Virus record (IMG/VR): IMGVR_UViG_3300037116_000299
Location: 124,001-188,000 of that record
Length of the DNA: 64,000 nt
Reading direction: 5' to 3' (one strand)
Positions within the stretch are counted from its first letter, which is position 1. Each line of letters opens with the position of its first letter. The translations under genes were made by a program, and so were the position numbers. Under the pieces are notes generated by a model, which was given only the letters and a program-made list of their open reading frames with translations, did no database searches and had not been told where the DNA came from. This document shows positions 13,156 to 42,267 of this stretch, one piece after another.

Positions 13156-13165
13156 CCTATACTAG
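13156..13165 (+). promoter_or_regulatory. Class B putative late promoter CCTATACTAG
   Basis: Intergenic copy of a motif seen five times at operon starts. Confidence 0.65.
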
Positions 13166-13175
13166 GAAGGGTCGT

Positions 13176-13910
13176 ATGAGCACACCAGGGTTGATCCCCT
13201 CACCCGAAGACCTTTCTCCCTCCTGCACACCGGCACTTCCCGCCCCCAAAGTGAACATCAACAGCCTCATGGCTCGTGATGAGGACCTGGGGCTGACCAC
13301 GGAAGAGCAACAGGAGCTGGAAACCTACCAATCTGCCCTCATCATCCTCGGCCCCGCCGCCGGCGCCGTCCTCGTGTGTCCCGGCAACCAGGACAACGTG
13401 GCGGACGAGGACAAGTGTCCCTACTCGTCCAAGTGCCCCCTCCTGCGCGCCCGCAAGGCGCCCGCGGATCGACTCTGCCCGATCGAACGCAAGATCGTCG
13501 AAGAGCGCTTCGGGGCCTGGTGCCGGGAGATGGAAACCGAGCCCGATACCCTCAACGAGTCCAACCGCGTCGCCATCTCTGATCTCTGCTGGCTCGACCT
13601 GCAGGAGCAGCGCTGCCTGCACATCGTCGACAAGGGCGAGCAGGCCCGGCTCACCGTTACCAACCCGAAGGATGTGCACCCCGAGACCCTGTTGCCTATC
13701 TCGTGGGAGAAAGTCATCCATCCGAACGTCGAGCTTTTGGTACAGCTGCAGACGCAGCGCAGGATGATCTTGAAGGATTGGATGCTCACTCCGGAACAAC
13801 GCTGGAAGAAGGCGAAGGCGGAGAACAAGGGAACCGGGAAGGACCTGAGCAGCAAACAGTCCGCACGAGCGGACCTGCTGCGCAAGGGAACGGTTTCACC
13901 ACAAGTTTAG
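13176..13910 (+). CDS. Possible terminase small subunit with Cys cluster (244 aa)
   Basis: C-terminal VIHPNVELLVQLQTQRRMILKDWMLTPEQRWK resembles the P27-type TerS pattern (P......LTP..R); under a class B promoter. Confidence 0.4.
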   Translation: MSTPGLIPSPEDLSPSCTPALPAPKVNINSLMARDEDLGLTTEEQQELETYQSALIILGPAAGAVLVCPGNQDNVADEDKCPYSSKCPLLRARKAPADRLCPIERKIVEERFGAWCREMETEPDTLNESNRVAISDLCWLDLQEQRCLHIVDKGEQARLTVTNPKDVHPETLLPISWEKVIHPNVELLVQLQTQRRMILKDWMLTPEQRWKKAKAENKGTGKDLSSKQSARADLLRKGTVSPQV

Positions 13911-13994
13911 CGATACCCCACACGGAGAGAAGGTTGCTCCGAATACGGGCCGGGAGGGTTCACTCTCCCGGCTTAGTTCTCTTACGAGGTAGCA

Positions 13995-15374
13995 ATGTCG
14001 AAGCGCGAACGCGGCAGGCCAAGAGCAGGCGTCACCTACGAGCAGATTGCAGCGGAAGTGGCTGCAGGGCAGGATTTCAACCAGATCGCCATCAAGTTCA
14101 GCGTATCGCGCGACACTGTTGACCGGCGGATCAAAGAGCACACCGGAGGCAAGAAGGGCGTCAAGAGTGCCGCCCGCAAGGCTGCCACCAAGCGTGCCGC
14201 GGACAAGAAGGCCAAGGCCGCTCCGGTCAAGAGCCTCCATGCCCGCGCCATCCTGTCCGAGCGTTCGAAGAAGGCCGACTGGAGCGCGACGCCTGAAGAT
14301 TGCATCGCCGATCTCCGCTTGGTCCAGGAAAACCACTCCGACTCGTTCATCTCACGCAACTACTACCGCGTGCACGGCAAGTACAGCGACAGTACCTGGA
14401 ACTGTCATTTCGGCACGTTCGAGGAGTTCAAGCGGCGCGCTGGCCTGCAGCTCTCCCGCGGCCAGCATCACCTGGAGAAGAAGACCGCCCGCCACGCCGC
14501 CCTCGACGTCTATCGCCAGTTCTTCCTCGAAGAAGTGAAGCCCTGGGTCGGCAAGTACGAACTCAAGCAGACCGATGGCCGCATCAAGACCATGCTGATC
14601 GGCAGCGATCTGCATGATGTCGAGGCCGACCCGTTCGTCCTGTCTGTCTTCCTGGACACCGCCAAGCGCGTGCAGCCGGATGTGATCGTCCTCAATGGCG
14701 ACATGTACGACGAGTACGAGTTCTCCCGCTTCGACCAGGATCCGCGGCAGGTGAACATCCGGGCACGTTACGACTTCGTGCGCGAGCAGTTCTTCAAGCC
14801 CTTGCGCAGGATCTGCCCGAATACGCAGATCGATTTCATCATCGGTAACCACGAACAGCGCATTCTGAAGCTGCTCGCCGATCGCTCTCCCGCCATGAAG
14901 GTCCTCGTCGACCTGATGGGCGTCACCTTCTCGCAGCTGCTCGGGCTGGACGACTTCAGGATCAACCTGATCTGCAAGAGCGACTTCGCGGCGTACAACG
15001 CCAAGGAGATGCACGAAGAGGTCAAGCGCAACTACAAGAAGTATTACGAGACCGTGATCGTGAACCACTTCGGCGACGAAGGGTTCGCCATGTGCTCAGT
15101 CGGAGGCCACACCCACAAGCCCAAGCTCAGTTCGACGGTCAATGAAGTGATGGGCCCCATCTGGGCGCTCACCACCGGCGCGATGGCCAAGGTAGATGCG
15201 GAGTACGTCCCCGGCAAGACCAACTATCAGCAGTCGTTTGCCCTCGTTCACGTCGACACCTGGAGCCGCCAGGCGCTGCCCGAACACATCATGTTCACGT
15301 CACGCATGGCAGTTGTCGGCGGGAAGTTCTACTTCCGGCCCGAGCCGGAAGAAGAAGCGCAGCTCGCTGCGTAG
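13995..15374 (+). CDS. Calcineurin-like metallophosphoesterase with N-terminal HTH and a homing-endonuclease-associated-type repeat (459 aa)
   Basis: SDLHD, NGDMYD, GNHE, GHTH motifs; N-terminal HTH (FNQIAIKFSVSRDTVDRRIK); WSATPEDCIADL...YYRVHGKYSDSTWNCHFGTFEEFKRRAGL. Confidence 0.85.
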   Translation: MSKRERGRPRAGVTYEQIAAEVAAGQDFNQIAIKFSVSRDTVDRRIKEHTGGKKGVKSAARKAATKRAADKKAKAAPVKSLHARAILSERSKKADWSATPEDCIADLRLVQENHSDSFISRNYYRVHGKYSDSTWNCHFGTFEEFKRRAGLQLSRGQHHLEKKTARHAALDVYRQFFLEEVKPWVGKYELKQTDGRIKTMLIGSDLHDVEADPFVLSVFLDTAKRVQPDVIVLNGDMYDEYEFSRFDQDPRQVNIRARYDFVREQFFKPLRRICPNTQIDFIIGNHEQRILKLLADRSPAMKVLVDLMGVTFSQLLGLDDFRINLICKSDFAAYNAKEMHEEVKRNYKKYYETVIVNHFGDEGFAMCSVGGHTHKPKLSSTVNEVMGPIWALTTGAMAKVDAEYVPGKTNYQQSFALVHVDTWSRQALPEHIMFTSRMAVVGGKFYFRPEPEEEAQLAA

Positions 15375-15384
15375 GAGCCGTCCC

Positions 15385-15573
15385 ATGAACTCGTTCCGCG
15401 TCATCGAGGGTCAGATCGTCGAAGACATCTCCCCCTCCCAGGTACCACTCTTCCACCGCGCTGCATGGGAGATTGCTGAGAAACTCTGTACGAACGGAAA
15501 GGCCGACGTCACCAAGGTCTTCGACATCCTCGATTCGTACTTCCACATCCCGCCCGGCCAGCCTTCCCGTTAG
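15385..15573 (+). CDS. Hypothetical protein (62 aa)
   Basis: Start placed at MNSFRV behind TAGGAG. Confidence 0.65.
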   Translation: MNSFRVIEGQIVEDISPSQVPLFHRAAWEIAEKLCTNGKADVTKVFDILDSYFHIPPGQPSR

Positions 15574-15588
15574 CAGAAAGACAATCTG

Positions 15589-16023
15589 ATGCAGGCCATG
15601 AATATCTTCGTGGACGCAACCCAACAGCGCACCTTCAAAAGGCGCGCTGTTGCTGCGTTCCATAAGGACAAAGAGTATATGGAGGCTATCTTCGTCCGCC
15701 GGGGCGTTGGTGAGTTCCACGTCGTCAAGTTCATCAAGCTCAAGCTGCTCAAGCAGGGTCCCGAGATCGTCGACTCCGACGACGTCGAGTACCAGGCGCT
15801 GAAGAACGAGGCCAAGAACCTGGGGCTCGAGTTTGGCACCGTCCACACCCATCTCTACAACGACTCGGCTCCCTCGGAATGGGACCACAAAGAGAGCGTT
15901 GGCGAAGCCCTGGTTGGAGTCTGCTCCGTCTGGACCGACGAGAAGACGCAGAAGACCCACAGCCGTATCGACTTCTGGCAGCCTCAACTGCCCTGCAAGC
16001 TGAATGTTGTTCCCTCGAAATAG
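15589..16023 (+). CDS. JAB/MPN+ (JAMM) metalloprotease (144 aa)
   Basis: KEYMEAIF glutamate plus exact H-x-H-x7-S-x2-D motif (HTHLYNDSAPSEWD). Confidence 0.85.
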   Translation: MQAMNIFVDATQQRTFKRRAVAAFHKDKEYMEAIFVRRGVGEFHVVKFIKLKLLKQGPEIVDSDDVEYQALKNEAKNLGLEFGTVHTHLYNDSAPSEWDHKESVGEALVGVCSVWTDEKTQKTHSRIDFWQPQLPCKLNVVPSK

Positions 16024-16190
16024 GTGACCATGACCACATCCCCTCTGCGGACCTCTACCCAGGTCCGCCCCTCCCCTCTTGTCCGCGTCCCGACCAAGGT
16101 CATGAAGACCGGCGTCAGCAACTTTACCCCCGGGACGGCGACCTTCAGTCCCCGCGCCAGTGGCTCTCGCAAGCTCCGAGGGGTCTGATC

Positions 16191-16200
16191 CCTATACTAG
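16191..16200 (+). promoter_or_regulatory. Class B putative late promoter CCTATACTAG
   Basis: Directly before the first gene of the structural/packaging operon (AGGAG RBS, ATG 16222). Confidence 0.7.
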
Positions 16201-16221
16201 ATAGCTTTTAGGAGATCAATA

Positions 16222-16737
16222 ATGGTATCGATTCCAGCTAACAGAGCACTCAATATCCTCGACAGTGGGATGACGAAAGCCGCCTCCATGTGGAATTCGG
16301 CAGGCGCATCAAGGGCTGCAGGCATCGCCCGACAAGTTTCCAGTGGCATGCACCTGAAGAGTTCCGGGTTCGCTCTTGCAGCGGGCGCGGGCGCCGCGGC
16401 AGGTGGCGCGGCCGGTTACGCAGCCAGCGATGGCGATATGAGCGGAGCAGCCAAGGGCGCGGCCCTGGGTGTACTGGGCGTCGCCGGTTTCCGCGGCATC
16501 CAGTCTGCCCGTTCCAGCTATAACGGCGGCCTTCTTCGCGATGGCGTAAGTTCAGCCAAGAGCTGGGCTTCCGGAAAGTGGCAGAACGGCATGCTGCAGG
16601 CTCGTCTGGGCGCAATGGAATTGGAGCAGCGCAGCACCAGCGCCGCTGTGACGGCGGGGTCCGTAGGCAAACGGATGAGCAGCCGCGGTGCGGCAGAAGC
16701 CGATCGCGCGTTCTGGCGTGCCAATCCGAACGGGTAA
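16222..16737 (+). CDS. Gly/Ala-rich hydrophobic protein, possible virion-internal/ejection protein (171 aa)
   Basis: Glycine-zipper-like GFALAAGAGAAAGGAAGYA segment; late-operon position. Confidence 0.6.
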   Translation: MVSIPANRALNILDSGMTKAASMWNSAGASRAAGIARQVSSGMHLKSSGFALAAGAGAAAGGAAGYAASDGDMSGAAKGAALGVLGVAGFRGIQSARSSYNGGLLRDGVSSAKSWASGKWQNGMLQARLGAMELEQRSTSAAVTAGSVGKRMSSRGAAEADRAFWRANPNG

Positions 16738-16740
16738 ACC

Positions 16741-17466
16741 ATGACCGATCCCGTCTTTGCCGGCACCAAGGCAGCGCAGTTCCTGAAATCCAAGGGCATC
16801 TTCGTCGCCGCCGCGGCCGCCGGCGCCGGCGGCATCGCCATTGGAGCGGCACGCGGCAGCAGTCAGCATCAGGACGCTTCACCCACCACTCGCGCAGGCC
16901 TGGCGGCTCATCATGCGGTTGGCGCTGGCCTGATTCTGGCCGGAGTCGGAGCTGGAGTCTACGCCGCCAAGGGAACGCTTTGGAAGGGCGGCTACAAGGC
17001 CGCGACCGGTGCTGTCGAAGCGGGAGGCAAGTCCTTTACCGCAGCGACCCGGGAAACGGGGATAGCCAATACCTTTCTGAAACACCCCATCGTTCCTACC
17101 GCGATCGGTATGGGACTCGGCGGGCTCGTCGGGGCCCAGATGGACAAAGACAATCCCGCCGCGGGCGCCGCGATGGGGATGGTCGCAGGCGGAGCTGCAG
17201 GTCTGGCACTGCGTAGCGGCCGGAACATGGCCAAGAGCTGGAGCAAGACACCTCGGGTTGGCAAAGCAGCCTTGATTGCCGGCGCAGCGATCGGCGTTAC
17301 TGCAGCAGCGCACGCTTTCACCCACGAACAGTCTTATGCCGCTGATGACACCGCCGTAAGCGATGGCCGCGGCAGCTACGAGGCAACCGCGGGACCTCGA
17401 GAGCGGATGCAGTCGATGAATGCGACAGGATATCTGGTCTTCGGTCTCAACGCGCGTAGGCACTAA
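16741..17466 (+). CDS. Gly/Ala-rich multi-hydrophobic-helix protein, possible ejection protein (241 aa)
   Basis: Several glycine-zipper-like segments. Confidence 0.6.
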   Translation: MTDPVFAGTKAAQFLKSKGIFVAAAAAGAGGIAIGAARGSSQHQDASPTTRAGLAAHHAVGAGLILAGVGAGVYAAKGTLWKGGYKAATGAVEAGGKSFTAATRETGIANTFLKHPIVPTAIGMGLGGLVGAQMDKDNPAAGAAMGMVAGGAAGLALRSGRNMAKSWSKTPRVGKAALIAGAAIGVTAAAHAFTHEQSYAADDTAVSDGRGSYEATAGPRERMQSMNATGYLVFGLNARRH

Positions 17467-18509: not shown

Positions 18510-20636
18510 GTGAGCACTGGATTCGTTCCGTTGGCCGATCTTGTGGCCGGTCTTCCTGAGGAAGATCGGTCCTTTCTCGCCAACGCCATCAAACGCGATC
18601 AGAAAGAACACGCCGAGGGCAGCGACAAAGCTGGCATCATTCGGCGGATGCAGTGCGCCCAGTGCCAGAACTGCCAGGAGCACTACCGCACCAAGCATCC
18701 AGGCAAGCCCTTCGTCATCAAGTGCTTTGGCGTCTACGACACCCCTGACTATGAGGCGGCGAAGGTGCGCATGCACGCCGACGGCGAGGAGATGTCGATC
18801 GACGAGATCCGGGAGATCTATGACCCCGCGTTCTGGGGCTCACGCCACATCGTCGTCAAGAATGACGACGGCGACATCGTCTCTTTCATCCCCCGTTTCT
18901 ACCAGGAAGAAGCTCTGCGCTGCACCTCGCCACGCAAGATCGACCGTTGGGGCCGCGGCCTGGGCAAGACCATGAGCGGCGTGGTGGAGGAGATGCACTT
19001 CCTCTGCAACAACAAGAACACCCAGACCCTGGTGCTCTGTCCATCGGCCGCGCAAGCTCAGTTGTGGTGGGATGAGATCAACTTCCAGGTCGAGAACTCG
19101 CCGACCCGTGAGTTCGAGATCTTGCAGAAGAAACAGCAGCCGTACGCCATGATCCGCTTCGGCAATGGCTCGGTCCTGACCATCTTCACCGCCGGATCGA
19201 AGTCCGGTAAGGGCGCTGACTCCATTCGATCGCAATCCCCGCGCCGCATCCGGCTCGAGGAGCAGGACTTTCTCGCCGACAAGGATTACCAGGCGATCAT
19301 GCCGCTGTTGCGGCGCTTCAAGAACGTCACCTTCCACGGTTCCTCGACGCCGACCGGCAAGCGCGAGATGTACTGGCAGATGTGCAACAAGCTGGCCGAG
19401 TACCAGGAGTTCTTCCACCCGGTCATGGATCACCCGGACTGGGGCAGTGAAACTCTCAATGAAGAGGCCTGCTTGGCCGAAGCCAAGACCATGGACCGCT
19501 ATCGCCATGAGTGGCTGGCCGAGTTCGGCGATCCCGAGGCCGGGCTCTTCAAGAGCGCCTTCGTCGACGCGGCGATGATGCCGTTCACCATGCGGTCTTC
19601 GATGTACTCCCCGGACAAGAACCATGTGATGGGCATCGACTGGAACGGCAAAGGCACCGGCACCCGCATCGTGGTCACCCAGTACGATCCTTCGACCCGC
19701 AAGCGGAGAGTGGTGCATCACGAGACCATCGACGACCCCAAGTCGACGACCCGCAAGTCCATGGCCCGCATCGTCGAGATCAACAAGATGTGGCACTGCG
19801 ACTACGTGTACGTGGACGCGGGGTTCGGCTTTGTCCAGGACGAGTTGATCAAGGAGATCGGCGTCGCCGCCGGCACCTTCGACCCTGACACCGCCAAGCT
19901 GAAGTACATCAAGGTCATCGACTTCGGCGCCAAGCTCGAAACCAACGCCATCGTCCCCAACCGGGACCCCAATTCCAAGTACCTGGCCGATCCGAAGGAC
20001 GACATTCTGAAGCGCCGCACCAAACCCTTCATGGTTGAAGGCATGGTCATGGCCTTCGAAGCCGGCCTGGTCGAGATCTCGCGCGAGTACAACACCCTCG
20101 AAGAGCAGCTCCGCGGCTACCGGGTCAAGACCTGGACCAAGGGCGGCGCAGCCGACACCTACATCACCGACTCCGAATCTGGCGACCATGACCTCGACGC
20201 CTGCATGCTGTCGATGCTGGGGATCGAGCTGAACTACGGCCTCTGGCACACCAAAGAATCCATCCGGCGTTTGGTACAGATCGCGCACGTGTCAGGCTGG
20301 GGACTGCCGGCAACTGTGGTCAATACCCAGCCGGCGGCAGCGGACGATCCAGAACAGAGTCCAGCCGCGCGGATTGAGCAAAACCGGCAACTCCGCCGTC
20401 AGGCGTCCGGGGTTCCTTCCCGCGTTACTGCTGCCCAGACGGGAACATCGCTGCAGGAGAAATACCGGCTGATGTACCTCTCCAAGGGCAGCTACATTGC
20501 CGCCCCCACCGGAGGCGGCGCTGCCAGTTCCAACGGACGCGTACCCTCCCGGACCGGAGTCTTCCAGGGAGCCTCGCGGGGAGGTTCGCAGTACGGCAAC
20601 CCGCAGACTTCCCGGACTCGATTCAGGAGCTACTAA
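18510..20636 (+). CDS. terL: Terminase large subunit (708 aa)
   Basis: Q motif RFYQEEAL, Walker A WGRGLGKT, Walker B RIRLEEQD, motif III SSTPTG, RNaseH-like nuclease MGIDW...YVDAGFG...DHDLDA. Confidence 0.92.
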   Translation: MSTGFVPLADLVAGLPEEDRSFLANAIKRDQKEHAEGSDKAGIIRRMQCAQCQNCQEHYRTKHPGKPFVIKCFGVYDTPDYEAAKVRMHADGEEMSIDEIREIYDPAFWGSRHIVVKNDDGDIVSFIPRFYQEEALRCTSPRKIDRWGRGLGKTMSGVVEEMHFLCNNKNTQTLVLCPSAAQAQLWWDEINFQVENSPTREFEILQKKQQPYAMIRFGNGSVLTIFTAGSKSGKGADSIRSQSPRRIRLEEQDFLADKDYQAIMPLLRRFKNVTFHGSSTPTGKREMYWQMCNKLAEYQEFFHPVMDHPDWGSETLNEEACLAEAKTMDRYRHEWLAEFGDPEAGLFKSAFVDAAMMPFTMRSSMYSPDKNHVMGIDWNGKGTGTRIVVTQYDPSTRKRRVVHHETIDDPKSTTRKSMARIVEINKMWHCDYVYVDAGFGFVQDELIKEIGVAAGTFDPDTAKLKYIKVIDFGAKLETNAIVPNRDPNSKYLADPKDDILKRRTKPFMVEGMVMAFEAGLVEISREYNTLEEQLRGYRVKTWTKGGAADTYITDSESGDHDLDACMLSMLGIELNYGLWHTKESIRRLVQIAHVSGWGLPATVVNTQPAAADDPEQSPAARIEQNRQLRRQASGVPSRVTAAQTGTSLQEKYRLMYLSKGSYIAAPTGGGAASSNGRVPSRTGVFQGASRGGSQYGNPQTSRTRFRSY

Positions 20637-21056: not shown

Positions 21057-22672
21057 TGTCCTTCGATTCGATCAAGTTCGCGTACACCCCGCCGCCTACC
21101 GTTCCCGCGACGATCCCAGTCAATTCTGTTCAGCAACCCGGTCTGTTCATGAACCCCGGACAGACGAATTCGCTGAACACGTCAGTGGCAGGACAGTTGA
21201 TCGCCAGAGCCAAGGAGCTGCTCAATGCCAATCGGTACCTTCAGGATGTGATCCTGGCGCGCAGCCAGGGATTGGGCGTGGAGTTCGATCCCGCCGTCGA
21301 CCCCAGCACGGCGCAGTCGCTGGAGATTCTCTACCCGAACCAGATCGTCCCGACTTCGCTGACCGTCAACATGTACGGCCGGATGCTGGACGCAGAACTG
21401 GCCGCGCTGCAGATCGACACCGCGCTTGGCACCAACAGCGCCTGTGAAGTCAACGCCTTCCAGGCGGCGGCTGTGAGCCAGGTGGCTCAGGCAATTGAGA
21501 ACGGCTTGCTCAACAGCGGCAAGTTCCAGTACCAGCTGCCCCTGCTGCTCCGTCAACTCAAGGGAGATACCGCCCTCTTCAACACCGTAGCGACCGAACT
21601 GGCCAGGTACCCCGTGCTGGCGGCGCCGGCGGCGTCGCTCACGAGCGGCAAGCCGAGCTTGATCTCGGTGCGCGGCCAGGACGTGTCGCCTGCCCTGTCG
21701 TCCATCATGAACGACGCGTTTGACTCATTCCAGAGTTCCTACGCTTCGGTCTATCAGCTGGCGGCAACGACGGGTGTCATCGACCAGGACGTCAACAACG
21801 TCCTGAACCAATACTTCATCGAGCCGGCCGCGAACCTGATTCGTATGACGGCTCTGTTCGACTCGCTGATCGGGTTTGCCCATCTCCCGCGGTTGAAGTC
21901 AGTGGTCAACGGGCTCACCGGCTACGCCTTCATGATGCTGATCGCCGAGGCCTCCACGATGGAGTTCATGGCCGATCGGTTCATTCAGACCGCAATCATG
22001 CCGCTCCGCCAGATCACCAGCAACATAGGCGACATGGTCAAGCAGGTACAACTTGCAACTGCCCTGGTGGGTCAGGCTGCCGGCGGCGTCAAGCAGGCCT
22101 ACAACCACACCACCGGCGGTCTGAAGGGAATGTCCTTCGGCTACAGTTGCGGACTCCCGCACAACGCGGCGGCTCAGAAGCCGGCCGTTCCGGAAAGCGT
22201 TTGGTCCGTTCCTGGCGTTGGCAAGATGTCCCAGGGCCTGACCGCCCTGGCCACCCATCTCGACTGGGCACAACACGAAGGCATGAAGAAAGCCAGCCTG
22301 GTCCAGGAGTCGTTTCAGAAGCTCCTGCAGCGCCGTGTTGGCGACATGAACACCCAGCTGGACCTGATGTGTAGTACCCAGGCTTTGAACACGCTCACCC
22401 AGCTCGCGCGATCCGTCCTCTCTTTCACCGGATCCGCGGCGCCCGTGGGCGGCACCCAGACCATCAGTCAGATGCAGGCCGTCACCCAGATCATGAACGG
22501 CATGCAGTCCGCCACCGGATCCTCTTATGTTGTCGTGAACAGCCAGATGCAGGCCGTTCCTCCTTCCGTTCCCGCGCCACCGAGCAGCGTCCAGACCACT
22601 CTGGTCAACGGAGGCCTGACCCTCGTCGCCACTTCGGCGGCCGTCAAGGCACCCACCCTTGGAGCAAGCTAA
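21056..22672 (+). CDS. Hypothetical, probably virion protein (538 aa)
   Basis: Long coupled ORF between terL and the portal. Confidence 0.7.
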   Translation: MSFDSIKFAYTPPPTVPATIPVNSVQQPGLFMNPGQTNSLNTSVAGQLIARAKELLNANRYLQDVILARSQGLGVEFDPAVDPSTAQSLEILYPNQIVPTSLTVNMYGRMLDAELAALQIDTALGTNSACEVNAFQAAAVSQVAQAIENGLLNSGKFQYQLPLLLRQLKGDTALFNTVATELARYPVLAAPAASLTSGKPSLISVRGQDVSPALSSIMNDAFDSFQSSYASVYQLAATTGVIDQDVNNVLNQYFIEPAANLIRMTALFDSLIGFAHLPRLKSVVNGLTGYAFMMLIAEASTMEFMADRFIQTAIMPLRQITSNIGDMVKQVQLATALVGQAAGGVKQAYNHTTGGLKGMSFGYSCGLPHNAAAQKPAVPESVWSVPGVGKMSQGLTALATHLDWAQHEGMKKASLVQESFQKLLQRRVGDMNTQLDLMCSTQALNTLTQLARSVLSFTGSAAPVGGTQTISQMQAVTQIMNGMQSATGSSYVVVNSQMQAVPPSVPAPPSSVQTTLVNGGLTLVATSAAVKAPTLGAS

Positions 22673-24915
22673 TGCCCAGCAAGACCGCTAACCAGATGAA
22701 AGCAGACCGTCTTCAGATCCAGGAAACGTATCGGCTCACCCGCCTCATGGCATTCACGGACGGCACGCTGAAGAGCGCGTCGAAGCCGATCGCGATGCGG
22801 AGGACGGTTGCCGGCAAGCAGATGGAGCCCAACATCAAAGGGCTCGGCGATCGTACCGCTTCGTACACCGGCGGAACCTTCCAGCCGCGGGAGATCCCGA
22901 CCGGAGCACGCCACGTCACCGATGCCCAGATGCGCGCCTGGAAGACGACCGTCGACAGCGGGATGAAGATCGCCGATGCCGGGAAGATCATCAACCCGGA
23001 CATCACCCGGATCAAGCAGGCCAAGGCGGCCGACTACATCGGCACCTATTACATGTGGAATGGGGTCCTGCAGCCGGAATACGACATGCGCGAACCGCAT
23101 GCCATCGTGGACACCGAAGTCTATGTAAAGCAGATGGTCCACCGGAAGCTGGCGCTCGCCGCCCGCGCCGGCTACGAGATCATGAGCGACCGGGATGAGG
23201 ACGCTGAGTACATCCAGCACCGCATCGACGTCATGGAGTTTGTCTCGGAGCGCAGTTTCCCCAGCCTGCTCAAGGGCATTCTGTACAACCTCTTCACCTG
23301 CTCCAACTGCTTTGTTCACAAGCTGCGCAAGGAAGATGCGTCCCCGGTTCCCCGCAAGAAGGGGATGCCGGCGCCGGTCGCCGCCTATTCGATCATCCCG
23401 GCCCACACCATCCAGCCCTACCTCGAGCATGGCCGGATCGTGAAGTGGCGTCGCTTCTTCGACTCCGCCGTTCCGTGGCAGGACATCCCGGTCGAAGACA
23501 TCATCCACTTCAAGTGGTCCTCCGATCTCAAGGCTGGCCACATCTATGCCACCCCGCGCACGATCGCCGTCCGCGACGACATCTTTGCGCTCCGCCGCTT
23601 GGAAGAGAACGTCGAACTGCTGTTCATCAACCACTTGTTCCCGTTGTTCCACGTTCAAGTGGGCACCGCGGAAGCGCCTTGCACCTACGGCGACAACGGC
23701 GAGTCTGAGATCGACCTGGTCCGCTGGCAGATCGAGAACATGCCGAAGGAAGGCGTCTATGTCTCGGACGAGCGCGTCAAGATCAGCGCCGTCGGCGCCG
23801 AAGGCAAGTCCCTCGACTTCTCCCCACTGGTAACGCACTACAAGAGCCGCGTCTATGTCGGGCTGGGCATGAGCGCCATCGACATGGGCGAAGGCGCGGA
23901 CGCAACGCGCGCCACCGCCGACAACATCTCGCAGAACCTCAAGGATTCGATCAAGGCCGATCTCGATGACCTGGCCGATCAGATCCGGATGTTCATGTTC
24001 CGCGACTGGTTCATGGAGGCGAACTACTCGACCTCCGTGCAGAAGGGCGTGGCCCGCACCTTCATCCGGTTCCACGAACTGGATCTCGACAACCGGATCA
24101 AGGAAGAGACCCACGTCCTGGCTCTCTTCAACTCCCACCTCATCACCGAGGATGAAGCCCGCAAGCGCCTGAAGTACAAGGCGATGACTCCGAAGGATCG
24201 GGGCAACACCCACTTCAGCCTGCATGTGGTGAAGCTTGAGAAGGAGATTACCAAGTTCAAGACTGCCTCGACCCTCGAAATCAACGCCGCCAATGTCGAC
24301 AACGAAAAGAAGATGGCAGGCACCCAGATCAAGCTGATGGAGGCGCAGGCCAAACTCTCCGAGACCAAGACCGGTCACGAGGAGCAGAGTCTCGCCGCCC
24401 AGGCCAAGCATCTGCCTGTCATCGCCAAGGCCAAGGTAGCGGTGGCGAATGCTACCGCGCGCAAGGGCGCCGCCGGCGCGCCGCGCCGCTCAACCGCCAA
24501 GAAGACGACGCAGACCGCGGCCGCCGTCTCGAATAAGATGCGCCCGACCAACCAGCACGGCAGCGGCCTGGGGCCGACCAAGGCTAAGTCCAGCCGTGAA
24601 TCCTTCATGGGCGAGTTGTACGAAGGCTTGCTGCTGGCGCGCGAGGACATGATCAGCGATGGACAGTCCGCGCCGAAACAGTGGCAGTCGGTCAGTTCGG
24701 AAGTGGTAGATCAGGTCCTGGACCGTATGGAGAAAGCTGAAATCACCGGTTCGGGTGGTGATTCCTATACTAGACAGGTGAGAGATGGACTTAGCCGATT
24801 GAAGGCCATGATCGCTGAGACCTCTGACCCTGAACTTCTCTCTGTCCTCCTTCGGGAAGGCATCGAGGAAGAGGTAGTAGACGATGTCGAACTTCACGAC
24901 GCACTTGCCAGTTAG
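22672..24915 (+). CDS. Portal protein with long Lys/Ala-rich C-terminal extension (747 aa)
   Basis: Position between terL and protease; DIIHFKW, YATPRTIAVRDDIFALRR, LFPLFHVQVG, RVYVGLGMSAIDMG...RATAD portal-like motifs. Confidence 0.8.
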   Translation: MPSKTANQMKADRLQIQETYRLTRLMAFTDGTLKSASKPIAMRRTVAGKQMEPNIKGLGDRTASYTGGTFQPREIPTGARHVTDAQMRAWKTTVDSGMKIADAGKIINPDITRIKQAKAADYIGTYYMWNGVLQPEYDMREPHAIVDTEVYVKQMVHRKLALAARAGYEIMSDRDEDAEYIQHRIDVMEFVSERSFPSLLKGILYNLFTCSNCFVHKLRKEDASPVPRKKGMPAPVAAYSIIPAHTIQPYLEHGRIVKWRRFFDSAVPWQDIPVEDIIHFKWSSDLKAGHIYATPRTIAVRDDIFALRRLEENVELLFINHLFPLFHVQVGTAEAPCTYGDNGESEIDLVRWQIENMPKEGVYVSDERVKISAVGAEGKSLDFSPLVTHYKSRVYVGLGMSAIDMGEGADATRATADNISQNLKDSIKADLDDLADQIRMFMFRDWFMEANYSTSVQKGVARTFIRFHELDLDNRIKEETHVLALFNSHLITEDEARKRLKYKAMTPKDRGNTHFSLHVVKLEKEITKFKTASTLEINAANVDNEKKMAGTQIKLMEAQAKLSETKTGHEEQSLAAQAKHLPVIAKAKVAVANATARKGAAGAPRRSTAKKTTQTAAAVSNKMRPTNQHGSGLGPTKAKSSRESFMGELYEGLLLAREDMISDGQSAPKQWQSVSSEVVDQVLDRMEKAEITGSGGDSYTRQVRDGLSRLKAMIAETSDPELLSVLLREGIEEEVVDDVELHDALAS
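24764..24773 (+). promoter_or_regulatory. Class B putative late promoter CCTATACTAG
   Basis: Inside the portal 3' end, upstream of the head-assembly genes; context TTCCTATACTAGACAG matches the 42258 copy. Confidence 0.55.
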
Positions 24916-34797: not shown

Positions 34798-35961
34798 ATG
34801 GCAGCATCCCTCAGCTATCTCCTCAATGACAGCTCTACCTTCGCTAACTACTTCGCGTGGGCGAGTTCTTTCGCCACAGCATTTATCGCGGCAGGTTCTT
34901 GGGTGCAATCACCCGATACTGGCCAGGTGATGTGGTCCGGGTTGAGCATCACAGCCGTGAGCATGTCCGGCACAACGATGACCTGCACCTATTCTTCTCA
35001 GACAGGTCTCGCCCTGGCTGTTGGCCGTGCTTTGACCGTCACCGGATGGACGTCCGGCAACGTCGGCAACAACGGCACCTTCGTCATCACCGGCGGAACT
35101 CTTACCGCGGGCAGCGGAACCTTCACTGCGACCAATGCTGCAGGAGTCACCGTGGCTTCGGGAGGTACTGGGGTAGTCACCGCCCAGGCGACCGCTCCTG
35201 GCACGAACGTGTACTTCTATGAAATCTGGCAGCCAAACGATGGTCTGACGAACTTCTACCTGAAGATGGAGTACGGGAGCTATTCCTCCGGTACCAATGC
35301 ACCTACCATAGCGGCCACCATCGGGGGAGCCACAAATGGAGCTGGAATCATTGTTGGTCTTGCCACAGGTCGATTCGTTGGTTCAGTGGTCACGAACACC
35401 GCTGCTTCTTCCACCATCCCCTATGAGTGCCGATTCTCAGGCGGAGCTGGGTACTTCGGAGCCATGCTATGGAGAGGCATCAACAATGGTCAGTTGGTGT
35501 ATGTGGAGCGTTCGGTCAACTCTTCGGGTGCCTACACTAGCTCCCATGTGACTCTGGTAGTCATTGGTGCAGCCGCAGGGACTCAAGCATGTTCGGCCAA
35601 TCAGCAGACGTACACGCTTGGCGGTCTTGGCCCTGCTCCACAGGTGTGTTCATCTTCGAACACGAACAACATCAACTATATTGGCCTGTCCATCCGCAAT
35701 GCTAACCCCCGAACCTCTCTTGTGTTCAACAACAGCGTGCCATTCGATACATTGGCCCCCGTTGTTGGCTACTACGACTATCCGCTACTTGGACTCGGGG
35801 GTACTAACTACCTCAACGTCACTGAAGGCCAAATCCTAGTGACCCCTGTGTATGGAACGAACCACACCTACATCTGCACTCAGGCGTACCCCTTTTCTTT
35901 TGCGTTTGTAGGCGCGGGTTCAAGCAGTGCCGGTCAGTCTCTTGCTATGAGGTACGAATAA
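34798..35961 (+). CDS. Ser/Thr/Gly-rich fibre/receptor-binding-like protein, paralogue 1 (387 aa)
   Basis: End-to-end similarity to 35962-37110; fibre-module position. Confidence 0.6.
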   Translation: MAASLSYLLNDSSTFANYFAWASSFATAFIAAGSWVQSPDTGQVMWSGLSITAVSMSGTTMTCTYSSQTGLALAVGRALTVTGWTSGNVGNNGTFVITGGTLTAGSGTFTATNAAGVTVASGGTGVVTAQATAPGTNVYFYEIWQPNDGLTNFYLKMEYGSYSSGTNAPTIAATIGGATNGAGIIVGLATGRFVGSVVTNTAASSTIPYECRFSGGAGYFGAMLWRGINNGQLVYVERSVNSSGAYTSSHVTLVVIGAAAGTQACSANQQTYTLGGLGPAPQVCSSSNTNNINYIGLSIRNANPRTSLVFNNSVPFDTLAPVVGYYDYPLLGLGGTNYLNVTEGQILVTPVYGTNHTYICTQAYPFSFAFVGAGSSSAGQSLAMRYE

Positions 35962-38870: not shown

Positions 38871-39940
38871 GCCACTTGGATCTTGGTCTTGAGGACCGCG
38901 ATCCAAGGCTGCATCCATCCCGTATCGCGCGAGTTCCGTTCGATCGCGGCCAGCGTCCTGTCCGCGAGTCCGATCCTTCCGGTTTGAATCGCAGCAAAGG
39001 CAAACTCGTACGGCATTAGGTGCTGGTAGATGGTGGCATCGATGAACAACCGATCTTCCTTCGGATAGGGGAAGTCGTGGCCCCAGACCGAAGCATAGAA
39101 GAATGCCATCCGCGGCTCATCGATCGCCCGGTAATGCTGGACGATTTCATAGATCGGCTCAATGCGCGTCGGCCGATATTGGTAAGCCTTGAGGAATAGG
39201 GGCAGCACGGTCGCCTCCCAATCCTCTCCCAGGCGCATGGCCATCCGGCCCTTCTGATACATGGCGTACCAGCGTTCCTCGTCGAAGCCTTCAAGCAGCA
39301 CGCGTCGCCCATACCAGTATTCGGCGGGCCCATAGTGGCCGAAGTCCTTGTAGGACTGGGCCAGATAGAAGAGGCTCCGCGGATTGGTCGGATCTTCGAT
39401 CACAGCCTTGGTCAACAGGCAGATGTCGCGTTCGAACTTGTCCGTACGCATTGCTCCATCCGCCAGGTGAGTCAGGCTGATGTCGTGGATCTGCTCAAAG
39501 CGCAGCGCCGTCGGCGACGTGATGTATTCGTGGGTGACCCCGACATAGTTCCACTCGTGGCGCGACGACACCAGCATGGTCTGGGTGTAGTCGAGCGACC
39601 CTTCGTAGCGCAACTCATACGCATCCGCGGTCAGCTTTTCCTTGAATGGAGCCCGAACATTCAACACCATGTCCGCATCCATGATCAGCATGTAATCAGT
39701 CTTCGCCCGAGCGAGCCGTACGAGTTGCGTGCGATTGGCCCCGAAATTCACCCATGGGACTTCAATCAGATCCCCCGGCAGGCTCCCCAGTACGTCGAGC
39801 ACGATCGCCTGGGTGCCATCTGTCGACCCTGTGTCGCAAACGATCCAGGAATCGATCCATGGCTTCGCGGACTCTAGGGCGCGCCGAACGACTGCGCTCT
39901 CATTCTTCACCATCATGGCCAGGCAAACAGTTGGTTTCAT
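38867..39940 (-). CDS. Family-2 glycosyltransferase with C-terminal TPR-like region (357 aa)
   Basis: VCLAMMVKNE, IVCDTGSTDGT, WVNFGANR, LIMDAD (DxD), GVTHE; RSLFYLAQSYKD TPR-like helices. Confidence 0.9.
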   Translation of the reverse strand: MKPTVCLAMMVKNESAVVRRALESAKPWIDSWIVCDTGSTDGTQAIVLDVLGSLPGDLIEVPWVNFGANRTQLVRLARAKTDYMLIMDADMVLNVRAPFKEKLTADAYELRYEGSLDYTQTMLVSSRHEWNYVGVTHEYITSPTALRFEQIHDISLTHLADGAMRTDKFERDICLLTKAVIEDPTNPRSLFYLAQSYKDFGHYGPAEYWYGRRVLLEGFDEERWYAMYQKGRMAMRLGEDWEATVLPLFLKAYQYRPTRIEPIYEIVQHYRAIDEPRMAFFYASVWGHDFPYPKEDRLFIDATIYQHLMPYEFAFAAIQTGRIGLADRTLAAIERNSRDTGWMQPWIAVLKTKIQVA

Positions 39941-39946
39941 ATCGCC

Positions 39947-39977
39947 ATCATTCCATTGGCGAAAGTAGGTACCAAAG
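39947..39977 (-). promoter_or_regulatory. Class A putative phage promoter on the minus strand (CTTTGGTAC ... AATGAT), probably leaderless
   Basis: Hexamer at +25 and SD-less ATG at +37, both shifted by one base relative to the +24/+36 sites. Confidence 0.65.
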
Positions 39978-39994
39978 ACTAGACCCGCCGTCTT

Positions 39995-40004
39995 CCTATA
40001 CTAG
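39995..40004 (+). promoter_or_regulatory. Class B putative late promoter CCTATACTAG
   Basis: Back-to-back with the class A site; followed by ATAGCT as at 16191. Confidence 0.7.
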
Positions 40005-40058
40005 ATAGCTCCAGGAGCCTTTTATTGCGGCTCTACTCCGACAACAGGATGTCCAACC

Positions 40059-40343
40059 ATGAGTCTTTCGTCCTCAGATGAGAAGGAAATGCTTCTCAAA
40101 GTACGAGACATCCATGCCGTATTCATCGGCATCGAGGGTCAACCAGGGCGCTTTGCCACCCTTTCCAACACCGTAGAAGGACACGGCCGCCAGCTCGGCA
40201 GGCTTCAGAAGTTCCAGTGGGCGTTGACCGGTATGGGCGTCGTCATTGGCTATCTCTTCTATCATCTGGCCGGAGTTCTCGGCGCGGTTGACGCGCTGAA
40301 GAAGATCTCCTTCGTTCACACCGTCTTCCTTTCCAGGACCTAA
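40059..40343 (+). CDS. Small membrane protein, coiled coil plus TM helix (94 aa)
   Basis: FQWALTGMGVVIGYLFYHLAGVLGAV; holin-like architecture. Confidence 0.6.
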   Translation: MSLSSSDEKEMLLKVRDIHAVFIGIEGQPGRFATLSNTVEGHGRQLGRLQKFQWALTGMGVVIGYLFYHLAGVLGAVDALKKISFVHTVFLSRT

Positions 40344-40889: not shown

Positions 40890-40892
40890 GTC

Positions 40893-41630
40893 ATGCAGAG
40901 CAATCTCGTATTCCACATCGCGATCCCGCGCGGGCTCAAACTGAAGAACGGCGCGACACTGATGAAGGACGTCACCTTCGACCTCATCAGTCAGCTCACT
41001 CCGTTTTACTCGAGTGTGGACCTGGTGCGCCTGGGCGGCGGACCTGCGATCGCCAAGCTCTCCGACATCACCCTGGCTTGCCAGATCTTCCAGGCCAGTC
41101 TGAAAGCAGACCTGATCTCACCCAACCATCATCCCTGGTTCGGGCCGCAGTTCAAACGTTTCCTTGGCGCCCGGATGCAGTGGACCACAGCAGTCGCCAC
41201 CCGCGACCTGATGCTGAACATCGTTTCCCTGCTGGGCCCGAGCGCGCACGTGTTGGCCAACTTCTCCGCCGATCGCAAGACCGACCTCAAACAGCCCCTG
41301 TCCCAGATCGCCGGCGACATCAAGAGCTACGAGGTTGCGGTCCGCAGCGGCGGCCGTACAGTTCCGGGCGGCCGGCCCACCTTCCACTTTGCTGCCAAGG
41401 GAGTCATGGACTGGGGCGAACGCACCCCCGGGCGATCCTGGAGCGGGAACGGTATGGGTGCAAACGCCACCTCGATTGATCCCGGGTCCGCCACCGGCGG
41501 CCGCGGCAAGCCGGTCAAGTTCTTCGCATCCCCCATCTGCTCGCCGCCCTTCTCCGCGATGCGGTCTGGCATCTACCAGCCGGGCTATCCTCTGGCTCCA
41601 ACGTCGATGTCCTCGTCGGGGTACTACTAA
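40893..41630 (+). CDS. Putative head-tail adaptor/neck protein (245 aa)
   Basis: Position before closure and terminator-like genes; helical N-terminal domain. Confidence 0.5.
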   Translation: MQSNLVFHIAIPRGLKLKNGATLMKDVTFDLISQLTPFYSSVDLVRLGGGPAIAKLSDITLACQIFQASLKADLISPNHHPWFGPQFKRFLGARMQWTTAVATRDLMLNIVSLLGPSAHVLANFSADRKTDLKQPLSQIAGDIKSYEVAVRSGGRTVPGGRPTFHFAAKGVMDWGERTPGRSWSGNGMGANATSIDPGSATGGRGKPVKFFASPICSPPFSAMRSGIYQPGYPLAPTSMSSSGYY

Positions 41631-41632
41631 GC

Positions 41633-42214
41633 ATGGATTTCTACGGCAACATGAGCATGGTCCCGGACATCCGGGAAGAGCTGCACGCAGTCATTCACGG
41701 CCGGGCGGATGTTACACCCCAGGGCCGCGGAGTTGTCCTGCGCCGGCTCAGCAATACACCGTGCGCCTGCTGGGACCCGGTCACAGGCGGCAGCAAGCGC
41801 CCCAACTGCCCGTACTGCAAGGGTGAGGGTTGGCAGTTCATCGAGACCCAGGAAACGATGGCGATCTACCGCGGCGTCGCCCCGGTCTATAAGCCGGGTG
41901 TGCTGGCCACCGGCCAGTATCCCCAGGCGGGTATGGGCTATACCGATACCAACCGCGCAACCGCCTACGTCGAGTTCTTCCGCACAGACGGCAGCGAGGT
42001 CTATCCGAACTACGAACGCTACACGCTGCAGGAGGCCAAGGCCTACGACAAGCTCTACGAGCTGAAGGTCGACCACGAAGGCGAGCTGGTCATCGATCTC
42101 ACCGGACACTTCGTCCGGACGGTCAAATGGAAGGTCCTGTCGGTGGTTCCCACGCACGGAGATCACGGTCGAATCGAGTTCTTCGAGCTTGGCCTCGAGA
42201 AGGAGAACGCCTAA
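41633..42214 (+). CDS. Putative head-closure/neck protein with Zn finger (193 aa)
   Basis: CACW...CPYCKGEGW; position. Confidence 0.55.
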   Translation: MDFYGNMSMVPDIREELHAVIHGRADVTPQGRGVVLRRLSNTPCACWDPVTGGSKRPNCPYCKGEGWQFIETQETMAIYRGVAPVYKPGVLATGQYPQAGMGYTDTNRATAYVEFFRTDGSEVYPNYERYTLQEAKAYDKLYELKVDHEGELVIDLTGHFVRTVKWKVLSVVPTHGDHGRIEFFELGLEKENA

Positions 42215-42257
42215 ATGCGCGTGATCAAGTGGTGAATCACCGGTAGAGGTGTGTCTT

Positions 42258-42267
42258 CCTATACTAG
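42258..42267 (+). promoter_or_regulatory. Class B putative late promoter CCTATACTAG
   Basis: Intergenic, before the tail operon. Confidence 0.7.

What the first reader, a model, noticed from the sequence alone, without database searches (positions are those of the whole stretch)
13156..42267. Class B motif CCTATACTAG marks the starts of structural operons
Seen: five exact copies (13156, 16191, 24764, 39995, 42258) ahead of the TerS candidate, the packaging operon, the head genes, the neck genes and the tail operon. Flanks are also shared (TCTTCC..., ...ATAGCT, ...ACAG). No shared -35 is visible. Established: T4 late promoters are -10-only (TATAAATA). Inference: a late promoter for RNAP-1 or a late sigma. 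The TATACT core could also be a plain host -10.
Basis: partly seen in the sequence, partly recalled or inferred. Interest (0 to 1): 0.65.

Follow-up and report, generated by a model that had tools for sequence, protein, structure and literature searches.

The report
Phage-specific late promoter motif
A 16-letter DNA signal that sits in front of the head, tail and packaging gene blocks of a giant soil-bacterium virus is conserved letter for letter in related viruses and absent from the host, so it is almost certainly a virus-specific "start transcription here" sign, probably read by the virus's own unusual RNA polymerase.

Summary
CCTATACTAG occurs five times in the window, all on the + strand (0.05 expected). 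It occurs nine times in the 214-kb genome as a 16-nt block, TTCCTATACTAGnnAG. Every copy lies between genes or in the last 150 nt of a gene. Eight of nine point the same way as the genes downstream: packaging, head, tail-sheath and baseplate blocks, and a tRNA cluster.

The block is identical at six orthologous positions in two other phage lineages (proteins 50-78% identical), while the flanks are at chance level (0.92 against 0.34). A related prophage in a 6.1-Mb Acidobacteriaceae genome holds all 7 copies; the rest of that genome holds none.

There is no -35, except at one conserved composite site. It is therefore a phage-specific promoter-like element. Late timing and the start site are inferred, not shown.

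A second phage-specific motif, CTTTGGTA-N16-CAyrCT, fits the sigma. For class B I favour the phage polymerase (0.45) over sigma-directed host polymerase (0.35). Host sigma alone is unlikely.

The parts
13154..13169 (+). Class B site 1 (ATCCTATACTAGGAAG). The ATG of the 244-aa ORF 13176-13910 starts exactly 10 nt after CTAG.
   Evidence: An orthologous site with the same 10-nt spacing to the ATG is present in lineages R1 and G004.
16189..16204 (+). Class B site 2 (TCCCTATACTAGATAG), 21 nt before the ATG at 16222. It heads the block that runs to TerL (18510-20636).
   Evidence: Orthologous in R1.
24762..24777 (+). Class B site 3 (TTCCTATACTAGACAG), inside the last 150 nt of the portal gene. It lies ahead of the 60-aa and 703-aa ORFs and the major head protein gene.
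   Evidence: All five codons it spans are identical at the nucleotide level in three lineages.
39993..40008 (+). Class B site 4 (TTCCTATACTAGATAG), in a divergent intergenic region. A leftward class A motif (39948-39977, minus strand) sits just upstream.
   Evidence: RNA-library contigs are nearly absent over 39910-40100.
42256..42271 (+). Class B site 5 (TTCCTATACTAGACAG), 40 nt before the ATG at 42308 (virion protein), followed by the tail sheath gene.
   Evidence: A contig of metatranscriptome run X17 begins at 42269, 2 nt after the 10-mer, after a coverage gap over 42046-42268.
53644..53657 (+). Near-match CCTATACTAATAAG inside the 1676-aa ORF. Status uncertain.
   Evidence: It keeps A12 and G13 of the consensus but lacks the TT before CC. 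Conservation in relatives was not checked.
35531..35540 (+). Near-match CCTACACTAG inside ORF 34798-35961. Probably chance.
   Evidence: The flanks do not fit the consensus.
1..2820 (-). N-terminal 940 aa of a 1041-aa YonO/QDE-1-like two-barrel single-subunit RNA polymerase (genome 123695-126820; the 3' end lies left of the window). Candidate reader of class B.
   Evidence: Atlas neighbours carry PF05183. 93 homologues were found. GGGDxDD is invariant. 6 of 49 family members hit PF05183. The family profile hits QDE-1 at E 3e-4. The model has pLDDT 89.7, and Foldseek matches QDE-1 at E 4e-13, plus RDR2, Thermus phage P32 gp64 and crAss phi14:2 gp66.

Best explanation
Class B (TTCCTATACTAGnnAG) is a phage-specific, -35-less promoter. 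It launches rightward transcription of the virion-gene blocks: packaging, head, tail sheath and baseplate. Elsewhere in the genome it precedes a tRNA cluster and two further units.

The most likely reader is the phage's own YonO/QDE-1-like single-subunit RNA polymerase. I propose that it binds the single 16-nt block and starts within or just after it, around the G of CTAG to the conserved AG.

Shown: the motif, its strand and position rules, its conservation, its absence from host DNA, and the presence and fold of the polymerase. Inferred: that it is a promoter, that it acts late, where transcription starts, and which enzyme reads it.

I put about 0.85 on 'phage-specific promoter' and 0.45 on the full statement including the polymerase.
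For: (1) Over-representation. 5 copies against 0.05 expected in the window. It is the top-enriched intergenic 9/10-mer in the genome.

(2) Position. All nine sites are intergenic or at a gene's 3' end, and 8 of 9 point with the downstream genes. One sits about 140 nt upstream of a six-tRNA cluster, which rules out a translational signal.

(3) Footprint. Five related IMG/VR records carry 6-7 copies each, 33 of 33 on a single strand within their own record, against 0-1 per record in controls. Six positions are orthologous. Identity is 0.92 inside the block and 0.33-0.35 in the flanks.

(4) Phage-specific. In a 6.1-Mb Acidobacteriaceae MAG, all 7 copies lie within the ~144-kb stretch of contig C4 (3.097-3.241 Mb) that holds the RNA polymerase homologue and every class A and class B site, and none elsewhere.

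(5) No E. coli-type sigma-70 promoter was found in 12-31 kb, where 3.1 were expected.

(6) Polymerase. The phage encodes a confidently modelled two-barrel RNA polymerase of the QDE-1/YonO class. Homologues are present in every lineage that was long enough to check.

(7) Precedent. YonO transcribes the SPbeta late genes (PMC5467207). The P23-45 two-barrel polymerases each use a single-block motif (PMC10770324). The distant relative 0305phi8-36 has an RdRP-like polymerase and a proposed 21-bp phage-specific motif (PMC2147016; TerL link).

(8) Two classes, two machineries. Class A is two-block and fits the sigma-like protein. Class B is single-block. The two differ consistently at -12 (C in A, T in B) and at -6/-5, with no intermediate forms.

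(9) Start-site hints. Conservation runs to A12/G13. An RNA-library contig starts at index 11 of the block.
Against: There is no direct start-site, timing or binding evidence. The RNA runs are assembled contigs and may contain DNA; I estimate about 0.15 contig ends near the two sites by chance.

TATACT is a good sigma-type -10, with A at -11 and T at -7. At the 190283-type site it sits 16-17 nt downstream of the class A -35 in all three lineages. Class A -10s (yCC-CAyrCT) resemble the class B core.

The block stays identical although the polymerase orthologues are only 30-44% identical. That is unlike T7-family co-variation of polymerase and promoter.

The sigma-like gene is followed directly by class B sites.

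A gp55-like small sigma would escape the scans used.
Confidence: 0.45

Rival explanations
1. Class B is a -35-independent promoter read by the host core RNA polymerase carrying a phage-encoded sigma. That sigma is either the 463-aa sigma-like protein (genome 15784-17175, minus strand), alone or with a cofactor, or an undetected gp55-like late sigma. TATACT is the -10, TTCC is an upstream extension, and AGnnAG is the discriminator. The start would lie 6-8 nt after TATACT.
For: TATACT has the A(-11) and T(-7) that sigma-70-family -10 elements share.

At one conserved site it sits exactly 16-17 nt downstream of the class A -35 CTTTGG in three lineages, where the background frequency is 1%.

Class A -10s share C(-8), T(-7) and a pyrimidine-rich -16..-13 with class B.

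The sigma-like family has region 4 and a region-2.2-like motif. Its best PDB hits are SigF and FliA.

At the 190283-type site the ATG lies 8-9 nt after TATACT with no SD in all lineages. Several class A sites give leaderless ATGs 5-7 nt after their -10.

T4 late promoters (gp55) and P23-45 late promoters are precedents for -35-less promoters read by the host polymerase.
Against: Eight of nine sites have no trace of the class A -35.

Classes A and B form two separate groups, not a continuum: -12 is C in A and T in B, and the AG at -6/-5 is seen only in B.

Conservation of positions -2/-1 (A12, G13) is not typical of sigma promoters.

The RNA contig starts 3 nt upstream of the expected sigma-type +1.

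PF04542 (region 2) finds nothing in the genome.

This reading leaves the phage polymerase with no recognisable promoter class.
Confidence: 0.35
2. Class B is an ordinary host promoter: a strong -10 used by the host housekeeping sigma alone. It would be active in uninfected cells.
For: TATACT matches 5 of 6 positions of TATAAT. Promoters with only a -10 are common in some high-GC bacteria (general knowledge).
Against: A 12-16-nt block that is invariant across sites and lineages is not how housekeeping promoters behave. The 10-mer is absent from ~5.9 Mb of Acidobacteriaceae host DNA, while all 7 copies lie in the prophage. The other 13 TATACT hexamers in the phage lack the flanks and mostly lie antisense inside genes.
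Confidence: 0.04
3. Class B is not a promoter. It would be another oriented cis element at operon boundaries, such as an RNA processing site or the binding site of a late regulator or anti-terminator.
For: No start site has been mapped. CTAT...ATAG around CTAG gives a weak imperfect dyad. The block would be transcribed by read-through from upstream genes at several sites.
Against: The block is strictly asymmetric and tied to one strand. The distance to the start codon varies from 6 to 44 nt. It occurs before tRNAs and at a site antisense to its neighbours. It has an AT-rich TAnnnT core in a 59% GC genome. It forms no hairpin. An RNA contig begins at it rather than spanning it.
Confidence: 0.1

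Closest known systems
SPbeta YonO and its late promoter P(YONO) (Forrest et al. 2017, PMC5467207)
   Same: Both have a single-chain two-barrel RNA polymerase of the RdRP/QDE-1 class encoded next to the late region. In SPbeta it transcribes the structural and lysis genes.
   Different: SPbeta has one mapped start site for one ~35-kb operon, and its promoter sequence is undefined. Here there are 9 sites with a clear consensus but no start-site data. The two polymerases are not alignable by tblastn. The catalytic motif here is DxDD, not DxDGD. No enrichment of the motif was seen in the SPbeta yon region.
Thermus phage P23-45 gp64 and gp96 polymerases and their promoter motifs (PMC10770324)
   Same: The fold family matches: Foldseek hits P32 gp64 and P74 gp62 at E 3e-5. 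Each phage polymerase there is tied to its own single-block motif upstream of start sites.
   Different: Those motifs drive pre-early and early genes, and late genes use modified host polymerase. The motif sequences are unrelated (AT-rich and GC-rich). The host and morphotype differ.
Bacillus phage 0305phi8-36: RdRP-like orf99 and 21-bp promoter candidates (Hardies et al. 2007, PMC2147016)
   Same: It is the nearest named phage lineage by TerL (24-29% identity group). It is a jumbo myovirus with an RdRP-family polymerase. A phage-specific single-block motif absent from the host was proposed as the polymerase target.
   Different: That motif is 21 bp, lies in the non-structural arm ('middle'), and was never tested. 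No sigma was found in that phage, whereas this one has a sigma-like gene. The logo is not in the text, so the sequences could not be compared.
T4 late promoters (TATAAATA, gp55/gp33/gp45)
   Same: Both lack a -35, have a single AT-rich block with a TAnnnT-like core, and stand before late virion genes.
   Different: The lengths are 8 nt against 16 nt and the sequences differ. No gp55, gp33 or clamp-loader logic was detected here. This is a temperate jumbo phage of Acidobacteriaceae.
T7-family promoters
   Same: Both are near-invariant blocks of 16-23 bp that probably include the start site and are repeated before late operons.
   Different: PF00940 found no T7-like polymerase gene, but that scan is uninformative because its controls also rang nowhere. 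There is no sequence resemblance beyond an AT-rich segment near the presumed start.

Membership tests
Housekeeping sigma-70-type promoter (-35/-10) | -35 hexamer 16-18 nt upstream of the -10 | tested here: not met
   No conserved block lies upstream of position -2. Eight of nine sites match the only -35-like motif of this genome at 4 of 8 positions or fewer. No TTGACA/TATAAT-type site was found in 12-31 kb.
Housekeeping sigma-70-type promoter (-35/-10) | -10 of the form TAnnnT | tested here: met
   TATACT is invariant in all sites and lineages.
Housekeeping sigma-70-type promoter (-35/-10) | Used on the host chromosome | tested here: not met
   All 7 copies in the 6.1-Mb Acidobacteriaceae MAG lie in the prophage-bearing stretch of contig C4.
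T4-type late promoter (gp55-dependent) | A single -10-region block, no -35, before late genes | tested here: met
T4-type late promoter (gp55-dependent) | TATAAATA consensus and gp55/gp33 homologues | tested here: not met
   The consensus is TTCCTATACTAGnnAG. No sigma region 2 hit was found in the genome. gp55 and gp33 were not searched for by their own models.
T7-like single-subunit RNAP promoter | A T7-family RNA polymerase gene (PF00940) in the genome | tested here: inconclusive
   No hit, but the control genomes rang nowhere either, so the scan is weak evidence.
Promoter of a two-barrel single-subunit phage RNAP (YonO / P23-45 gp64 class) | The phage encodes such a polymerase | tested here: met
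   Homologues are in the relatives that carry the motif.
Promoter of a two-barrel single-subunit phage RNAP (YonO / P23-45 gp64 class) | Primary transcripts start at the motif | tested here: inconclusive
   Only assembled RNA-library contigs were available. One begins 2 nt after the 10-mer at 42269, and coverage dips at both sites.
Promoter of a two-barrel single-subunit phage RNAP (YonO / P23-45 gp64 class) | The polymerase binds or initiates at the motif | not testable with these tools
   Needs in vitro transcription or ChIP.
Promoter of a two-barrel single-subunit phage RNAP (YonO / P23-45 gp64 class) | Motif and polymerase co-vary across lineages | tested here: inconclusive
   The motif is unchanged down to 30% polymerase identity. 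At 33% it reads CCTATACTAA (L187), and at 29% there is a single GCCATACTAGTTAG (L188). Contigs of the more distant lineages were too short.

The most novel reading that the evidence does not exclude
TTCCTATACTAGnnAG is the promoter recognised directly by a YonO/QDE-1-class single-chain RNA polymerase. If so, it would be, as far as I could find, the first multi-site promoter consensus tied to a late-acting polymerase of this ancient class (P23-45 gp64 has a looser early-gene motif), and it sits in a temperate jumbo phage of Acidobacteriaceae that runs a three-part programme. The parts would be: a phage sigma on class A (CTTTGGTA-N16-CAyrCT), the phage polymerase on class B, and possibly a virion-packaged second two-barrel polymerase (the 1649-aa protein with an invariant DxDGD).
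Probability: 0.35. Interest if true: 0.75.

Novelty: new member of a known kind. Interest (0 to 1): 0.55.

Why it matters
Phage-specific late promoters are a known kind of element, so the motif itself is a new member of that kind, not a new principle.

Its value is as a handle. How YonO-class single-chain two-barrel RNA polymerases find promoters was left open when YonO was characterised (PMC5467207), and I found no later paper that answers it. YonO-class enzymes are discussed as possibly resembling the ancestor of all cellular polymerases. This phage offers nine near-identical candidate sites, a confidently modelled polymerase, and natural variants in at least five lineages. That makes the question directly testable in vitro.

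The finding also gives a first transcription map for jumbo prophages of Acidobacteriaceae, a dominant but poorly studied soil and peat group. It provides two compact, host-orthogonal promoter classes that could serve as genetic parts.

Tried and rejected
**Related phages**
- megablast of 20 kb against GenBank phages found no match.
- TerL as a single-protein query in IMG/VR found only identical copies.
- Relatives were reached instead by scanning IMG/VR for the 15-mer itself.

**Polymerase identity**
- PF00940, PF00623 and PF05183 scans of the genome were all blank.
- Pfam and PHROGs on the 1041-aa protein were blank.
- tblastn against phages was blank.
- The word-index protein search found only the protein itself.

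**Wider search for polymerase homologues**
- The family alignments A2 and A3 were too diverse for the search for related loci. Narrower sets worked.
- One homologue's contig had no DNA on file, and several others were too short to test co-variation.

**The 1649-aa DxDGD protein**
- Pfam, PDB sequence, PDB profile and hhalign against the polymerase family all gave nothing.
- The AlphaFold model failed (pLDDT 42.6), so no fold search was run.

**The 242-aa protein with a sigma region 4 hit**
- It is a NarL-type response regulator, not a sigma.

**Other motif checks**
- The SPbeta yon region shows no enrichment of the motif.
- A literature search for later work on a YonO promoter found nothing.
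- Other enriched intergenic 8-mers (GGATGCCG, TGACCCTG) showed no common context. TTGAACCC is a tRNA arm.
- The RNA downstream of the antisense site has no convincing consensus fold and no Rfam family.

**Readings rejected**
- A translational signal, a terminator, and a pac, ori or restriction-related site. The grounds are the tie to one strand, the variable distance to start codons, the absence of a hairpin, and the occurrence before tRNAs.

- Read laying was given 6,000 letters.


Full report
**1. The observation**

CCTATACTAG occurs five times in the window, at 13156, 16191, 24764, 39995 and 42258. All copies are on the + strand. Dinucleotide shuffles expect 0.05, and none of 100 reached five.

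With one mismatch two more sites appear, at 35531 and 53644.

Alignment anchored on the motif shows that conservation is confined to a 16-nt block, positions -2 to +13 counted from the first C. The block reads TTCCTATACTAGAyAG. Nothing is shared where a -35 would be.

The window is 124001-188000 of a 214,300-bp IMG/VR record with 59% GC. Genome-wide there are eight exact copies: seven on + and one on - at 15618. There is also TCTATACTAGACAG on - at 86906. The 16-mer with up to 2 mismatches gives 7 hits, against none in the reversed-sequence control. It is the most enriched 9/10-mer in intergenic DNA.

**2. Where the sites lie**

A GC3-based gene map shows genes on the minus strand from 1 to about 127.7 kb (replication and nucleotide metabolism). 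Genes from 128 to 210 kb are on the plus strand.

Within the window, PHROGs support these assignments:
- TerL, 18510-20636
- portal, 22672-24915
- major head protein, 28645-30132
- a virion protein, 42308-42973
- tail sheath, 43031-44878

All nine motif sites are intergenic or, at 24764, inside the last 150 nt of the portal gene. Eight of the nine point the same way as the genes downstream.

Outside the window:
- The site at 190283 precedes the genes after a 1896-aa SLT-domain protein.
- The site at 86906(-) lies about 140 nt upstream of a cluster of six tRNA genes.
- The site at 15618(-), with a weaker copy at 15699, follows a sigma-like gene.
- The site at 118984(+) is antisense to its neighbours.

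The distance from CTAG to the next start codon ranges from 6 to 44 nt. Together with the tRNA and antisense sites, this excludes a translational signal. No E. coli-type sigma-70 promoter is found in 12-31 kb, where 3.1 were expected.

**3. Comparative evidence**

No close relative exists among GenBank phages. TerL is distantly related (24-29% identity) to Bacillus phage 0305phi8-36, Acinetobacter phage ME3 and Moorella phage MTATph1.

Scanning IMG/VR for the 15-mer itself recovered many contigs of related but non-identical phages, with 54-86% tblastx identity.

In five such records the 10-mer occurs 6-7 times each. All 33 copies are on one strand within their own record. The reversed control gives 0-1 per record.

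Four of the records form one lineage (R1). G004 is a second lineage.

The genes downstream of the sites are orthologues of those downstream of the six plus-strand sites in this phage's late arm.

Across 18 pairwise comparisons, identity is 0.92 inside the block, 1.00 for the 10-mer itself, and 0.33-0.35 in the 45-nt flanks. At the portal-internal site, five codons show no synonymous change in three lineages.

The seventh, antisense site is also conserved. It lies 4-5 kb beyond the polymerase gene in R1, G004 and two further lineages, L185 and L186, and always continues as GAGCGGG or GTCGGG.

The polymerase family led to the host. One homologue lies in a 3.26-Mb contig of an uncultured Acidobacteriaceae MAG, and a fragment lies in a Terracidiphilus MAG. 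In that 6.1-Mb genome, all 7 copies of the 10-mer lie in the ~144-kb stretch of contig C4 (3.097-3.241 Mb) that also holds the polymerase homologue and all class A sites, which I take to be the prophage. None lies elsewhere.

The element is therefore real, under selection at the DNA level, and phage-specific.

**4. Transcript evidence (weak)**

Four metatranscriptome runs hold parts of the region, but only as assembled contigs.

In the best run (X17), coverage is nearly absent over 39910-40100 and over 42046-42268. One contig begins at 42269, two letters after the 10-mer.

With about 46 contig ends in 6 kb, I estimate 0.15 ends within 5 nt of the two sites by chance. The library may also contain DNA. 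This is a hint, not a mapped start.

**5. What could read it**

*A phage RNA polymerase.* The 1041-aa protein encoded at 123695-126820(-), of which window 1-2820 is the N-terminal 940 aa, hits no Pfam or PHROG family. The evidence for its identity is:
- Its language-model neighbours carry PF05183 RdRP.
- An exhaustive HMMER search found 93 homologues.
- Their alignment has an invariant GGGDxDD and a GxGKG motif.
- 6 of 49 members reach PF05183.
- The family profile aligns to the catalytic region of QDE-1 at E 3e-4.
- A model with pLDDT 89.7 matches QDE-1 at E 4e-13, plant RDR2, the Thermus phage P32 gp64 and P74 gp62 polymerases, and crAss phi14:2 gp66.

Homologues at 30-44% identity are present in the relatives that were long enough to check. 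Three published cases bear on this:
- YonO transcribes the SPbeta late genes, and its promoter is undefined (PMC5467207).
- 0305phi8-36 has such an enzyme and a proposed 21-bp motif (PMC2147016, PMC7824862).
- The P23-45 two-barrel polymerases each use a single-block motif (PMC10770324).

*A sigma-like protein.* The 463-aa protein at 15784-17175(-) has sigma region 4. Its family profile hits SigF and FliA. It shows a region-2.2-like DDIYDxLxxCLxRAxxKYDP motif. PF04542 itself finds nothing in the genome. A second region 4 hit is a NarL-type response regulator.

*A second promoter class.* The motif CTTTGGTA-N16-CAyrCT ('class A') occurs about 15 times, pointing with the genes. Several sites have an ATG 5-7 nt after the second block, which implies leaderless mRNAs. 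The motif is conserved in L185 and L186, and as TTTTGGyA in L188. In the Acidobacteriaceae MAG all 12 matches lie in the prophage. Its two-block architecture fits a sigma with regions 2 and 4.

**6. Weighing the readers**

*For the phage polymerase.* Class B is a single near-invariant block whose conservation runs to A12/G13. YonO offers a precedent for late genes. Two phage-specific classes match two phage-specific machineries. Classes A and B form two clean groups, with C against T at -12, AG at -6/-5 only in B, and no intermediates. The contig start falls at index 11.

*For a sigma-type reading.* TATACT is a good -10. At the 190283-type site it sits 16-17 nt downstream of CTTTGG(TA/TG/CC) in all three lineages. 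None of the other sites has this, and the background rate is 1%. Class A -10s share C(-8), T(-7) and pyrimidines upstream. The block is unchanged although the polymerase has diverged to 30% identity.

*Two spacing facts fit either model.* The ATG of the gene after site 13156 starts exactly 10 nt after CTAG in three lineages. The ATG after the 190283-type site starts 6-7 nt after CTAG with no SD.

*Host sigma alone is unlikely.* See: only 9-10 of 23 TATACT hexamers carry the flanks.

*Probabilities:*
- phage-specific promoter, about 0.85
- read by the YonO-like polymerase, 0.45
- read by host core with a phage sigma, 0.35
- host sigma alone, 0.04
- not a promoter, 0.1

**7. Novelty**

A phage-specific late promoter is a known kind of element, and this is a new member of it. 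The more novel reading is that it is a multi-site promoter consensus for a YonO-class polymerase. The evidence does not exclude that reading, and it would make an open question directly testable.

**8. Limits**

Late timing is inferred from gene content only. No start site is mapped. Co-variation of motif and polymerase could not be tested because contigs of the more distant lineages were short.

Noticed in passing
window 3933-3962, 5521-5550, 7696-7725, 10279-10308, 11648-11677, 30218-30247, 33066-33095 (+) and 39948-39977 (-); further sites elsewhere in the genome: A second phage-specific promoter-like class, CTTTGGTA-N16-CAyrCT. It points with the genes. Several sites have an ATG 5-7 nt after the second block, implying leaderless mRNAs. 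It is conserved in four other lineages. In an Acidobacteriaceae MAG all 12 matches lie in the prophage.
   Followed up: partly
genome 190255-190300 (L170:6255-6300), outside the window: A composite site. The class A -35 (CTTTGGCC here; CTTTGGTA or TG in R1; CTTTGGCC in G004) lies 16-17 nt upstream of the class B TATACT in all three lineages. The ATG follows 6-7 nt after CTAG with no SD.
   Followed up: yes
window 55630-60579 (+): A 1649-aa protein in the tail module. In five homologues it has invariant DxDGD (1173-1177), RxPxNA (1137-1142) and GxGKE (1067-1071). From memory, these resemble the two double-psi beta-barrel motifs of RNA polymerases, so it may be a virion-packaged polymerase. Sequence and profile searches were blank and the fold failed at pLDDT 42.6.
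   Followed up: partly
genome 118984-119100 (L014:18984-19100), plus strand: A class B site antisense to its neighbouring genes. It is conserved 4-5 kb beyond the polymerase gene in five lineages and always continues GAGCGGG or GTCGGG. It may give a short RNA. No convincing consensus fold and no Rfam family were found.
   Followed up: partly
window 3720-3800 (minus-strand sense), genome ~127720-127800: A block unique in this genome, GACACCAGGTAATCA...GGTTCGAGCCCACC, upstream of the polymerase operon. It is conserved in L185, L186 and L188. Its 3' part resembles a tRNA T-arm. ARAGORN and Rfam call nothing there.
   Followed up: partly
genome 210504-211807 (L017:2504-3807): A tyrosine integrase lies next to tRNA-Arg(CCG), with a resolvase at the record's right end. 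A relative is integrated in a 3.26-Mb Acidobacteriaceae contig. These are temperate jumbo phages of Acidobacteriaceae.
   Followed up: partly
genome 74283-75011 (L012:14283-15011), minus strand: A phage-encoded NarL/LuxR-type response regulator (REC + GerE domains; E 8e-20 to NarL).
   Followed up: yes
genome 75102-75521 (L012:15102-15521, minus strand), 73720-73793 (tRNA-Gln) and 81.8-86.8 kb (six tRNAs): ARAGORN calls a permuted tmRNA-like gene with a 32-residue tag, next to eight tRNA genes on the minus strand. The tmRNA call was not checked further.
   Followed up: no
window 30154-30185 and 13947-13974 (+): Strong GC-rich hairpins lie directly after the major head protein gene and after ORF 13176-13910. 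They are likely terminators or RNA-stabilising structures inside the late region.
   Followed up: no
L188:2280-2300 (minus strand): In the most distant lineage examined (polymerase 29% identical) there is a single GCCATACTAGTTAG. It is class B-like, but has the class A letter C at -12. It lies about 85 nt upstream of a class A-like site.
   Followed up: no
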